Shown here: positions 42,101-45,100 of the stretch, piece by piece
Layout of the letters: every line of letters begins with the position of its first letter
How positions within the stretch are numbered: position 1 is the first letter of the stretch
DNA from: Salpingoeca rosetta
Taxonomy: Eukaryota; Protista; Choanoflagellata
Direction of reading: 5' to 3'
Length of the DNA stretch: 64,000 bases
Assembly (NCBI GenBank): GCA_033442325.1
Contig: JAWQFM010000007.1
Span: forward strand, 1,640,312-1,704,311
Translations under genes and position numbers: made by a program
The notes under the pieces: model-generated
Told to the model about the DNA's origin: nothing
The model's database searches: none
Seen by the model: the letters and a program-made list of their open reading frames with translations, nothing else

Positions 42101-45100
42101 GTCTGCTTGTTCTCTTCATCGTCACTGGTGCATGTGCGCATGGCTGTGGATGCTGGTCGTGGTATGGTGCGAGTGGCGATACGCTTGGGCAGCTGCGTGA
42201 GGTCAAACGATGCCGCTGCGGTCTCGCCATGGAAATGGTGGCGCTGTAACTCTGCCTGGTCTGCTCTGGGGTTCTGCCTCTGGGCGCTGGCGCTTGGCAC
42301 TTTGAACCCGGCACCATTGACACCACCACCACCACCACCACCACTGCTCTGCCAGGCTGCAAGCCGCGCTGCCATTGCCGCCGCTGTCACGGAAGTTACC
42401 TGGCTTGCGCTTGCAGACTGCAGCGATTGTGCTCTTGCTGCCGGTGGCGCGTCCACTGCGGTGCCGCTCGCGTGTGTGCTCAATAGTGTCGCCACTGTCG
42501 CCGCTGATGTCGGTGATGATGCCAGCGCCGACGCTGTTGCAGTCGTGGCTTCCGCAAGTGCTGCTTGTCTCGCATCCAGTGCTGTCGCTGCTGTTGGCGT
42601 TGTTGCTGCTGGCGTTGTGGTTGTTGAAGGCGGCGGCGTTGGCGGTATTGGGGCCACTGCAACGGTGTGACGGCTTCGCAGCACAGGTCGCCCTCGCGCT
42701 GCGATCCGCGGGCGAAGAAACTTGCTGTCGTTGACGGCTGGCGTGGACGCGTGGCCGGCAACGGCAGCCGTGGCATGTGTGAAGTGGCGGTGGTGCTGAT
42801 GGGTGGTAAGAGGAACGGCGGAGGCGGACAGGTGCCCGACCGCCACACCGCCGACGGTGATGTGCGGTTGCCGCAGGGTTTGTGAGAGGCGAATGCTGGC
42901 TCGTCTCACCTCGTGCGACAAGCTGCTGTGGCGCCCGAGCTTGCGGCTTCGATGGCGGCTGTTTGCATGATTACTGTCGAAGTTGCCTGTGTCGTGCTCA
43001 TCACGTCGACCATTTCCTTCATTGTCGACACCATCACTATCACCATGACCACCGTCGTCGTCATCATCATCATCATCACCATCATCATCAGGATGACCAG
43101 TCTGTGTGTCATGACCTTGATCATCGCCGCACATGTCTGGGGCGTCGGCCATAATGGCGGTGCTGTGGCGACGCGACCGCTTCAGCATCTCCATGAACTC
43201 CGCAAAGTCGATCGTTCCATCACCGTCGGCATCAATCTGGCACATCAGGTCCTGCAAACCAAAAGGCGGCACTCGTGAGTGAGTGAGTGTTTGTGTGTGT
43301 GTGTGTGTGTGTGTGTGTGTGTGTGTGTGTGTGTGTGTGTGCGTGTGTGTGTGTGTGTGTGTGGTTGTGCTTGTATACTTGTGTGTGTGTGTGTGTGTTT
43401 GTGGTTGTGTTAAGTTTGAGCATGTTGGGCATACATGCAAAAAGTGGTCATGAAACCTTACCCGAATTTGCTCGCTGTCGATCATGTCATCGCTTGTGGA
43501 GTTGAGGGCACTCGTCAACTCACCAACAGAGATGGTTCCTGTCAAGGCACACGTGCACACACAAGTAGGTATTCATGACATTGGCGATCAACAAACACCC
43601 ACGCACGCCAACTTTGTGGATGTGTGTGTGTGTGTGTGTGTGTGTGTGTGTGTGTGTGTGTGTGTGTGTGTGTGTGGCAGCAAGGGAACGAGGAAGGGAA
43701 TAAGTTGCGCCCACGCACCGTCGCCGTCTGTGTCGAACATGCGAAAAACTTGCATGGTGGCGACAATGTCCTCCTTCTCCTCCTCCGTCAGCGCATCGCT
43801 GTGCATGATATCGTGCTGCACCTAAAACAACCAGTGTTCGAACCGAAGCAAGACAATGCGTTGCAGGGCAGATGGAATGCATGAGTAAAGTGACGTGACG
43901 GGAAATGGCTGATCATGTGGTGCGCGCGTGTTGCTGAGACAAGCAGGCCGAGGAAACAGCAAAGACGACAGGGGAGCACAGCAACATCAATGCAGAGTGG
44001 GTACGTTTGCACAAGGCACTGCCACGCACCCCCCCCCCTCATCACCACCACCGTCACTACACCTCTTCTGGTGTTTCGTTGATGTGTACGATATCCATCT
44101 TGAGCCACCGGCGAGCAAAATCGGCCACAACCTCCTCCCATCGGCGTGTTCGCGGGCGCACGGGTCGCAACAGTGCGCCAAGCGCACGCTCAGCCATCAC
44201 CCTGGTTTGTTCATGGGGAGGAGGGAAGCGTGATGATGAGACCGGTGTGTGTGTGTGTGTGTGTGTGTGTGTGTGTGTGTGTGTGTGTGTGTGTGTGTGT
44301 GTGTGTGTGTGTGTGTGTGTGTGTGTGTGTGTGTAGAGGTGGTGGCCTGGGACGAGAAGGGTATGGCGCAGGCTGGAAGTACGCCCGCGCACCTACACAG
44401 GCACATGCACACCCGCATACGTGTACATACACCCACATATTCATGTACATACACGCGCACACATACACGAGAACGTCAGCAGCTGCAGGAGCTCGGACCT
44501 CTTCTTTGTCAATTTGAATTGGGTGGCGATGACGACGAGAACAAGGTTGAGGGCAAACCACGAGCCCGCGAAGATGAGGAGCACAAAGTAGATAAACGCC
44601 CAGAAGGAGTGCGCCTTCTGCACTGCTGCCATAATGTTTCCCCATGTTTCCAGCGTGATGACCTGTTTTAGGAACAGCAAGCAAGCAGATCGAGGTGGTT
44701 GTTGTTGAGAGGGGGTGATGGGGCTGCGAATGATTTTTAGTTGACACACACATACACACACACACACATATATATATATATATATATATATATATATACG
44801 CACACACGCACGCACTCGCACGCTCAAGTCACACATTCGCACAAGTCACACACGCGCGCACGATTCGCGCATGCTCACACTCATACACGTGCGCTCATGC
44901 GAATATTCACGAGAAGCTCCGACCTGGAAGACAGTGTTGCAGGCAATGGCAATGTTGTCGAACGAGACGGCGCCAGCAAAGGGATTTGGGGCACGTGCTG
45001 CACATACGGGGAACGCATCGACAACGCTGGCTGTGATGGAGGAGGTGGTGGTGGTGGTGGTGACATTGGGGCCGCCAACAACGCTGGAGGGTGGCGGACA

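What the first reader, a model, noticed from the sequence alone, without database searches (positions are those of the whole stretch)
43180..44205. T-type Ca2+ channel with a built-in calmodulin-like lobe next to the gating-brake position
Seen: three exons (about 43821-43718, 43538-43462 and from 43250) stitch to [26 protein letters not shown]|[11 protein letters not shown]...EQIR|[23 protein letters not shown]. This gives two canonical 12-residue EF loops (DTDGDGTISVGE and [12 protein letters not shown]). EF2 is in the same uninterrupted reading frame as domain II, so it is unlikely to be a neighbouring gene. Just upstream, an amphipathic helix ([15 protein letters not shown]) follows I-S6. 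Knowledge: LTEE and DADG.GTIDF.EF closely resemble the calmodulin N-lobe; animal Cav3 channels have a helix-loop-helix gating brake at this position that is reported to bind calmodulin in trans, and I know of no EF-hands in that linker. Inference: a cis-encoded Ca2+ sensor that could give calmodulin-independent feedback, possibly by binding the adjacent helix. Novelty needs a literature check.
Basis: partly seen in the sequence, partly recalled or inferred. Interest (0 to 1): 0.85.

Follow-up and report, generated by a model that had tools for sequence, protein, structure and literature searches.

The report
T-type calcium channel with built-in calmodulin lobe
A choanoflagellate T-type (Cav3) calcium channel gene really does splice a calmodulin-like pair of calcium-binding EF-hands into the channel just after its "gating brake", the site where animal T-type channels are reported to bind free calmodulin; I found no paper that describes this.

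Summary
Confirmed. RNA-seq reads and one assembled transcript contig show exactly the predicted splice joints. They link the domain I pore loop, I-S6, a gating-brake exon and three EF-hand exons. The last EF-hand exon is one open frame with domain II.

The channel is Cav3-type. It has an EEDD selectivity filter and a helix-loop-helix brake, and it is sister to animal Cav3 with SH-aLRT 100.

Both EF loops are canonical, and the pair is closest to the calmodulin N-lobe.

Seven other non-animal Cav3-clade sequences carry the same module at the same spacing from I-S6. They include Salpingoeca infusionum and one relative whose gene is a single intronless ORF. None of seven animal Cav3 proteins has it.

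Published work noted "three additional internal exons" in this linker of the S. rosetta gene but never mentions EF-hands (PMC5379919). Six full-text searches found no description.

What remains inference:
- Ca2+ binding by the lobe.
- An effect on gating.
- Docking on brake helix 2, which has a Trp invariant in 8 of 8 sequences.

The closest analogues are trans-calmodulin at the animal Cav3 brake and the EF-hand domain of plant TPC1. This is a new variant of a known kind.

The parts
44927..44956 (-). 3' end of the domain I P-loop exon (..[10 protein letters not shown]), spliced to the I-S6 exon
   Evidence: Loose ends of 9 RNA reads (X16) and of the X4 transcript contig beyond 44665 map uniquely here. 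The intron is about 44666-44926, and the joint is ambiguous by 5 nt.
44499..44665 (-). Exon with the domain I selectivity-filter Glu (TLETW), I-S6 and the start of brake helix 1 (..[13 protein letters not shown])
   Evidence: Pfam Ion_trans on this translation. tblastn with P0001 gives 68% identity. Joint 44201|44499 seen in RNA. The donor is GTCCGA.
44063..44201 (-). Gating-brake exon: rest of helix 1, the loop, helix 2 and a spacer
   Evidence: Frame and GT..AG. RNA joints on both sides. It aligns with the helix-loop-helix of animal Cav3.
44096..44143 (-). Brake helix 2 ([16 protein letters not shown]), with the Trp that is invariant in all EF-bearing relatives
   Evidence: Alignment. Trp is present in 8 of 8 sequences, and animals have Tyr in CYEELLKY. 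The orthologue's AF2 models predict a helix here.
43719..43821 (-). Exon EF-A: ALTEEE leader, entering helix and first 5 1/3 residues of the EF1 loop (loop part 43734-43719)
   Evidence: 58% identity to P0001 residues 364-394.
43462..43538 (-). Exon EF-B: rest of the EF1 loop (43538-43519), exiting helix and inter-EF linker
   Evidence: The canonical loop appears only in the spliced product.
41104..43251 (-). Exon EF-C: EF2 (loop 43233-43198), a roughly 560-residue low-complexity distal I-II linker (poly-Asp, poly-Asn) and domain II S1-S5, in one open frame
   Evidence: Pfam EF-hand_1 and Ion_trans in one translation. PDB phmmer of the first 34 residues gives calmodulin residues 51-78, E about 1e-13. 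RNA depth is above zero in every bin from 41850 to 43277, and an X4 contig covers 41850-43024.
36187..40857 (-). Open frame holding the domain II pore (TTEDW), domain III (TRDGW) and domain IV (TGDNW). The real exon starts near 40640.
   Evidence: Pfam Ion_trans 356.9 bits in 4 stretches. Best named hits are T-type alpha-1H/1G.
45371..46665 (-). Domain I S1-S5 exons (approximate, from tblastn)
   Evidence: tblastn of P0001 against the window. Splice sites here were not checked with RNA.

Best explanation
The window holds a choanoflagellate orthologue of animal T-type (Cav3) calcium channels, consistent with Salpingoeca rosetta. Its I-II linker contains, in order after the I-S6 gate helix, the Cav3 helix-loop-helix gating brake and then a single calmodulin-N-lobe-like EF-hand pair.

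Shown:
- The EF pair is spliced in frame into the only transcript form seen.
- It is conserved, with both Ca2+-binding loops canonical, in all eight non-animal Cav3-clade sequences found.
- It keeps a fixed distance from I-S6 and from an invariant Trp at the start of brake helix 2, while the rest of the linker varies tenfold in length.

Inferred mechanism:
- Ca2+ entering through the pore binds the lobe a few nanometres from the inner mouth.
- The lobe opens its hydrophobic, Met/Phe/Leu-lined cleft and grasps an amphipathic helix of the same linker, most likely brake helix 2.
- This changes how strongly the brake restrains the S6 gate. The result would be Ca2+-dependent tuning of activation voltage or inactivation without free calmodulin.

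My odds, step by step: the fusion is real, 0.97; the lobe binds Ca2+, 0.85; it regulates gating, 0.6; the target is helix 2, 0.35.
For: Transcript:
- Four exact joints and a bridging 1597-nt contig; reads are stranded as expected for a minus-strand RNA.
- The upstream joint into the P-loop exon is also supported.
- Frame and GT..AG hold at every intron.

Channel type:
- EEDD filter.
- One clade with animal Cav3, SH-aLRT 100, with Cav1, Nav, NALCN and algal channels outside.
- Best named hits are T-type alpha-1H.
- The brake aligns with the animal brake.

EF pair:
- Pfam EF-hand_1 passes its cut-off in the window.
- EF-hand_7 scores 57-60 bits against a cut-off of 30 in relatives.
- Calmodulin is the best PDB match, and the N-lobe scores above the C-lobe (47.9 vs 40.0 bits; window EF2 vs CaM EF2 21.4 bits and vs EF4 10.0).
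- In the AF2 model of the orthologue the EF region has pLDDT 70-86, and Foldseek's top hits are calmodulin lobes (TM 0.76, rmsd 2.4 A).

Conservation:
- Two canonical loops in 8 of 8 EF-bearing channels and none in 7 animal Cav3.
- One relative encodes the whole channel, EF pair included, in a single intronless ORF.
- Trp to EF1 is 50-56 residues and EF1 to EF2 is 36-37 residues in all eight. EF2 to II-S1 ranges from 56 to 559.

Literature:
- Calmodulin binds helix 2 of the brake in snail and human Cav3.
- Calmodulin with intact Ca2+ sites is needed to prevent 'runaway gating'.
- The isolated N-lobe bound the Cav3.2 peptide with higher affinity than the C-lobe (PMC5723990).
Against: - No functional datum exists for any of these channels.
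- In the AF2 models of two orthologues, brake helix 2 has only pLDDT 44-58, so the models give no sign of confident docking.
- Helix 2 is poorly conserved in sequence apart from the Trp and its hydrophobic periodicity.
- A single lobe binds targets more weakly than whole calmodulin (PMC5723990).
- PDB and fold tests of the complete pair were run on the orthologue P0001 (52% identical in the pair). Only the window's exons were tested singly.
Confidence: 0.55

Rival explanations
1. The lobe is a genuine Ca2+ sensor, but its target is not the gating brake. It may grasp another channel segment (the helix between brake and lobe, the long III-IV linker, the C-terminus) or another protein. Its effect could be on trafficking, clustering or downstream signalling rather than on gating.
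For: The loops are canonical and conserved. AF2 gives no confident packing of helix 2. A third helix lies between the brake and the lobe in the P0001 model. Mammalian Cav3-calmodulin complexes have also been linked to CaMKII activation rather than gating (title and abstract of PMC5553682, listed, not read).
Against: The spacing to I-S6 and to the helix-2 Trp is fixed, while the spacing to everything downstream is free. That pattern argues for a partner in the proximal module. The distal linker, the III-IV linker and the C-terminus are not alignable among relatives.
Confidence: 0.2
2. The EF pair is a structural module that holds the brake in shape constitutively, either Ca2+-free or permanently Ca2+-loaded. 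It would then give no dynamic feedback, much like the EF-hand-like domain after IV-S6 of Cav1, Cav2 and Nav channels.
For: In Cav3.2 calmodulin behaves as a resident subunit needed for normal brake function (PMC5723990). Many EF-hand domains embedded in channels do not sense Ca2+ (general knowledge).
Against: All ligand positions (1, 3, 5, 9, 12), Gly6 and Ile8 are kept in both loops in eight sequences whose EF pairs are only 42-52% identical to the window's. Such conservation is not expected if Ca2+ binding did not matter. A permanently loaded high-affinity site is not excluded.
Confidence: 0.12
3. This is a gene-model artefact. The EF exons would belong to a separate small gene nested in an intron, or be rare optional exons.
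For: The EF exons are short and flanked by (CA)n-rich introns. Only two of the three raw-read RNA runs gave enough reads to show joints.
Against: The joints connect I-S6 to the brake to EF-A to EF-B to EF-C with no competing joint. One assembled transcript contig spans all of them. The frame is preserved. Orthologues have the same order, one of them without any intron.
Confidence: 0.02

Closest known systems
Animal Cav3 (T-type) channels with calmodulin bound in trans at gating-brake helix 2 (Chemin et al. 2017, PMC5723990)
   Same: Sister clade in the tree. Same EEDD filter. Same helix-loop-helix directly after I-S6, with an aligned aromatic-x-E start of helix 2. A calmodulin-type EF lobe is associated with this spot.
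   Different: Animal channels have no EF loop anywhere (0 of 7) and recruit free two-lobed calmodulin. Here a single N-lobe-like pair is covalently built in about 40 residues after helix 2. The anchor aromatic is Trp instead of Tyr.
Plant two-pore channel TPC1 (AtTPC1) EF-hand domain (bioRxiv 10.1101/041400)
   Same: A calmodulin-related EF-hand pair lies in the cytosolic linker between pore domains I and II, directly downstream of the S6 gate helix. In TPC1 it confers activation by cytosolic Ca2+.
   Different: TPC1 is a two-domain vacuolar channel. Its first EF helix is continuous with S6, with no brake between them. It is only 25-30% identical to calmodulin. No homology between the two insertions has been shown. 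No other four-domain channel family in the tree carries one in the linker, so independent gain is more parsimonious.
C-terminal EF-hand-like domain plus IQ/calmodulin module of Cav1, Cav2 and Nav channels
   Same: An EF-hand fold in cis in a four-domain channel, taking part in Ca2+/calmodulin feedback on gating (PMC8980814).
   Different: It lies after IV-S6, not in the I-II linker, and needs free calmodulin on an IQ motif. That its loops are not canonical Ca2+ sites is general knowledge, not tested here. The paper states that the module is absent from Cav3 channels (PMC8980814).
Calmodulin N-lobe
   Same: Best sequence and fold match. The ADQLTEE-like leader, both loops and the hydrophobic cleft positions are conserved.
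   Different: It is one lobe only, embedded in a protein of roughly 3000 residues. The S. infusionum pair is about 35% identical to solved calmodulin lobes over the Foldseek-aligned columns; for the window only EF2 was aligned to calmodulin.

Membership tests
Cav3 / T-type four-domain calcium channel | Selectivity-filter ring EEDD (Cav1/2: EEEE; Nav: DEKA) | tested here: met
   TLETW, TTEDW, TRDGW and TGDNW in domains I-IV, read from translations.
Cav3 / T-type four-domain calcium channel | Groups with animal Cav3 to the exclusion of Cav1/2, Nav and NALCN | tested here: met
   Quick ML tree, 32 sequences, 1113 columns with the EF columns not kept. The Cav3 clade has SH-aLRT 100, with the window inside a sister group to animal Cav3. 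No bootstrap was run and taxon sampling is limited.
Cav3 / T-type four-domain calcium channel | Helix-loop-helix gating brake right after I-S6 instead of an AID | tested here: met
   Alignment with animal brakes. Helices predicted in the orthologue. PMC5379919 also reports a predicted brake in the S. rosetta channel. Absence of an AID or IQ motif was not searched explicitly.
Cav3 / T-type four-domain calcium channel | Low-voltage activation and fast inactivation | not testable with these tools
   Needs electrophysiology.
EF-hand pair (calmodulin-like lobe) | Two 12-residue loops with ligands at positions 1, 3, 5, 9 and 12, plus Gly6 and a hydrophobic residue at position 8 | tested here: met
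   Both loops match the PROSITE-style pattern in the spliced model and in all seven relatives.
EF-hand pair (calmodulin-like lobe) | Significant match to curated EF-hand models | tested here: met
   Window EF2: EF-hand_1 26.1 bits against a cut-off of 25.4. Relatives: EF-hand_7 57-60 bits against 30. The EF-A exon alone is not significant, as expected for half a hand.
EF-hand pair (calmodulin-like lobe) | Four-helix, two-strand lobe fold | tested here: met
   Tested on orthologues only. AF2 gives H-E-H twice with pLDDT 70-86. Foldseek's top hits are calmodulin lobes, with TM 0.76 normalised by the target.
EF-hand pair (calmodulin-like lobe) | Binds Ca2+ and changes conformation | not testable with these tools
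   Inferred from the canonical, conserved loops.
Calmodulin proper | Free protein of about 149 residues with four EF-hands in two lobes | tested here: not met
   Only one pair is present, inside the channel polypeptide. It works like a calmodulin lobe but is not calmodulin.
TPC1-type EF-hand channels | Two-domain (2 x 6TM) channel with the EF domain continuous with S6 | tested here: not met
   There are four Ion_trans domains, and a brake of about 60-70 residues separates S6 from the first EF helix.

The most novel reading that the evidence does not exclude
The built-in lobe is a 'Rosetta-stone' fusion. It would dock Ca2+-dependently on gating-brake helix 2, using the invariant Trp as anchor, and form a self-contained Ca2+-feedback module. 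The trans calmodulin-brake interaction of animal T-type channels would be the split form of the same ancestral partnership. In that case Ca2+ regulation at the brake would predate animals, and either animals lost the lobe and substituted free calmodulin, or choanoflagellates captured a calmodulin lobe that was already a partner.
Probability: 0.3. Interest if true: 0.85.

Novelty: new variant of a known kind. Interest (0 to 1): 0.7.

Why it matters
T-type channels are usually described as the calcium channels that lack the built-in EF-hand/IQ calmodulin apparatus of Cav1/2. The claim that calmodulin nevertheless controls them at the gating brake is the subject of one paper among those I read (PMC5723990).

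A natural fusion of a calmodulin-like lobe to that same brake, in the closest unicellular relatives of animals, is independent evolutionary evidence that an EF lobe and the brake work together.

It also offers a simpler system in which to study the coupling. Sensor and target sit on one chain at 1:1 stoichiometry, and some orthologues are compact, at about 1,470-1,760 residues.

It dates Ca2+ feedback on low-voltage-activated channels to before animals. It also shows a second case, besides plant TPC1, of an EF pair placed right after the domain I gate.

Tried and rejected
- Complex prediction of the EF lobe against the brake segment of P0001 gave 'no answer' (score 0.02, controls not run). I do not use it for or against binding.
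As the tool advised, I laid the part beside it (41850-44900). RNA continuity from 41850 to domain II S1 is therefore not shown by reads.
- The window's own annotated protein was never retrieved. It is probably longer than the 2725- and 3073-residue limits. Its linker scores 143.5 bits against the profile, just under the 144.8-bit end of the list.
- Because the spliced product has no reference and I did not type long sequences into tools, whole-pair PDB and fold tests used orthologues. The window was tested exon by exon.
- The profile search of 1.84 billion representatives was largely swamped by proteins with many EF-hands. Only four full-length single-stretch matches were visible, so the family size of eight is a lower bound.
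- The third homologous-protein search, with the EF pair alone, found nothing. No EF-lobe phylogeny against calmodulin and centrin lobes could be built, and the genome's own calmodulin gene and its intron positions were not compared.
- The first tree attempt timed out in MAFFT. The tree used is a quick search on an FFT-NS alignment of 32 chosen rows; rows left out were P0023, P0026-27, P0029-32, P0034-37, P0040-43 and P0045-49.
- A search of the whole genome found no second locus combining I-S6 with EF exons.
- Earlier scan notes near this place concern other genes. A word search of the scan's notes was blank.
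Full report
**Observation**

On the minus strand, five consecutive coding pieces can be joined with canonical GT..AG introns and an unbroken frame:

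| Piece | Coordinates |
|---|---|
| I-S6 exon | 44665-44499 |
| 139-nt brake exon | 44201-44063 |
| EF-A | 43821-43719 |
| EF-B | 43538-43462 |
| Long exon (EF-C onward) | 43251 down to about 41104 |

- The first-stage coordinates were right to within one base.
- EF1 (DTDGDGTISVGE) is interrupted by an intron within the codon of its sixth residue, so it exists only in the spliced product.
- EF2 ([12 protein letters not shown]) lies at the start of the long exon. That single translation gives both Pfam EF-hand_1 (26.1 bits, cut-off 25.4) and Ion_trans (110.7 bits).
- A PROSITE-style EF-loop pattern occurs only twice in all six frames of the 64-kb window, against 0.02 expected in shuffles. It occurs twice in the spliced linker.

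**Transcript evidence**

- Three stranded RNA-seq runs kept as raw reads, and one older run kept as contigs, were laid on 41850-44900.
- Exactly four joints were reported: 43251|43462, 43538|43719, 43821|44063 and 44201|44499.
- Each joint had 6-27 spanning reads in the deepest run (X16); X15 showed three of them with 2 reads each, and X17, with 25 reads laid, none. No competing joint was listed.
- Intron bins have zero depth, although reads inside the intronic repeats were skipped, so this is weak on its own.
- First mates lie on the plus strand, as expected for a minus-strand RNA in the usual stranded libraries.
- One 1597-nt assembled transcript contig carries all four joints.
- Its continuation, and that of nine reads, beyond 44665 maps uniquely to 44927-44956, the end of the domain I P-loop exon.
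- The mRNA therefore reads P-loop, I-S6, brake, EF-A, EF-B, EF-C.
- Coverage then continues without joints to 41850, and the open frame runs on into domain II.

**What the gene is**

- The pore loops give E, E, D, D (TLETW, TTEDW, TRDGW, TGDNW).
- The best named database hits are vertebrate and cnidarian T-type alpha-1H/1G subunits, about 40-44% identical over the conserved domains.
- I built a maximum-likelihood tree of 32 four-domain channels on 1113 well-filled columns that exclude the EF insert. The window groups with five other EF-bearing channels (SH-aLRT 100). That group is sister to animal Cav3 (99), and the two together form a clade (100). Cav1, Nav, NALCN, fungal Cch1 and algal channels lie outside.
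- The segment after I-S6 aligns with the animal gating brake. Helix 1 continues from S6, a loop follows, and helix 2 begins with an aromatic-x-E motif: RWEEVV here and CYEELL in vertebrates.
- The closest named relative is from Salpingoeca infusionum.
- The assembly has 55.4 Mb in 68 contigs.
- The architecture matches the published description of the S. rosetta Cav3 gene, including 'an additional three internal exons' in the I-II linker region (PMC5379919).
- On this basis I take the organism to be S. rosetta or something very near it. This is an inference.

**The EF pair**

- The window's EF-C exon alone finds calmodulin in the PDB (E about 1e-13). Its best stretch is on calmodulin residues 51-78, which is EF2 of the N-lobe: 21.4 bits, against 10.0 for EF4.
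- The complete pair of the S. infusionum orthologue is 52% identical to the window's pair. It matches calmodulin at E about 1e-22, with the N-lobe ahead of the C-lobe (47.9 vs 40.0 bits), and the match includes the ADQLTEE-like leader.
- AlphaFold2 models of two orthologous segments give the helix-strand-helix pattern twice, with pLDDT 70-86.
- Foldseek's best hits are calmodulin lobes, with TM 0.76 and rmsd 2.4 A.
- It is one lobe, not calmodulin.

**Conservation**

Seven further sequences have the same order: I-S6, helix-loop-helix, EF pair.

| Sequence | Source |
|---|---|
| P0001 | S. infusionum transcriptome |
| P0007, P0009, P0051, P0052 | Environmental |
| P0087, P0095 | Fragments |

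- P0051 is encoded by a single intronless 4.4-kb ORF on a 19.4-kb contig. The fusion therefore does not depend on any splicing inference.
- All eight sequences have two canonical loops. None of seven animal Cav3 proteins has any.
- Between I-S6 and the lobe, the only invariant residue is the Trp at the start of helix 2.

Spacing in residues:

| Interval | Range |
|---|---|
| I-S6 to the helix-2 Trp | 25-35 |
| Trp to the EF1 loop | 50-56 |
| EF1 to EF2 | 36-37 |
| EF2 to domain II | 56-66 in the compact relatives, 559 in the window |

- The proximal module is therefore held fixed while the distal linker is free.
- The window's spliced linker matches a profile of five relatives end to end (143.5 bits).
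- That score is just below the cut of the list returned by the large profile search, so eight members is a lower bound.
- No second such locus exists in this genome.

**Mechanism**

Shown: the anatomy, the transcription and the conservation described above. The following steps are inferred.

- Canonical loops preserved across EF pairs that are only 42-52% identical to the window's imply that Ca2+ binding matters.
- Conserved hydrophobic cleft positions (EVF, ELxxAL, the Leu/Ile of the third helix, DFxEF..M) imply target binding of the calmodulin kind.
- The fixed geometry relative to S6 and to the helix-2 Trp points to a partner within the brake.
- The literature gives a precedent. In snail and human Cav3, calmodulin binds helix 2 of the brake.
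- Intact Ca2+ sites on calmodulin and an intact brake are needed to prevent a hyperpolarising 'runaway gating' shift.
- The isolated N-lobe bound the Cav3.2 peptide with higher affinity than the C-lobe (PMC5723990).

I therefore propose that Ca2+ entering through the pore loads the tethered lobe, and that the lobe then clamps or releases helix 2 and retunes the brake. The AF2 models do not place helix 2 with confidence (pLDDT 44-58), and the one complex prediction returned no answer, so the docking step stands on analogy alone.

**Comparison with what is known, and novelty**

- The nearest system by descent is the animal Cav3 brake with calmodulin in trans.
- The nearest by architecture is plant TPC1. 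Its calmodulin-related EF domain lies between pore domains I and II, is continuous with the S6 gate helix and confers cytosolic Ca2+ activation (bioRxiv 10.1101/041400).
- Cav1, Cav2 and Nav channels have a C-terminal EF-hand-like domain that works with IQ-bound calmodulin. One paper explicitly describes that module as absent from Cav3 (PMC8980814).
- Six full-text searches and five papers read found no statement that any Cav3 channel carries EF-hands in its I-II linker. The papers include those that analysed the S. rosetta Cav3 gene and its brake.
- Automatic Pfam annotation of the relatives does list the domains, so the feature is visible in databases but apparently undiscussed.
- I class it as a new variant of a known kind.
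- Whether choanoflagellates gained the lobe or animals lost it cannot be decided. The tree needs one change either way.

Noticed in passing
window 41733-41839, about 46800-46970 and about 43025-43099 (minus strand): The channel's coding exons contain very long homopolymer tracts: about 36 Asn (AAC codon repeat), more than 50 Thr in the N-terminal region, and an Asp-rich run just after the EF pair. RNA reads cover the linker exon on both sides of the Asp run. The tracts make the I-II linker roughly ten times longer than in the compact relatives.
   Followed up: partly
window 43292-43397, 43621-43676, 44245-44334, 46347-46426: Several of this gene's introns, including three of the four around the brake and EF exons, carry a (CA)n/(GT)n microsatellite of 50-106 bases.
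   Followed up: no
window about 37400-38100 (minus strand): The III-IV linker is about 330 residues, acidic and low in complexity, and it is also long in S. infusionum. PMC6259924 states that this linker is mostly 53-57 residues in four-domain channels.
   Followed up: no
window 44498-44493 (minus strand): The donor of the intron after I-S6 is GTCCGA, a weak-looking site. It is nevertheless the only one used, and a nearby GTATGT 38 bases downstream is ignored and would break the frame.
   Followed up: yes
window 41952-42767: Run X16 shows a minority of reads of the opposite orientation (depth up to about 5, against 14-51 for sense) inside the long linker exon. This could be a weak antisense transcript or library noise. 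A C>A difference at 42114 appears in 6 of 50 reads.
   Followed up: no
proteins P0028, P0030, P0031: Three unnamed protist four-domain channels, outside the Cav3 clade, carry a precomputed ubiquitin-family Pfam domain (PF00240). This would be another unusual domain embedded in such a channel.
   Followed up: no
L005:1-2069 and 8274-10410: The intronless EF-bearing channel gene of an uncultured relative (Logan run SRR27444427) has neighbours that include a large protein with a weak Somatomedin_B hit. The organism is unidentified.
   Followed up: no
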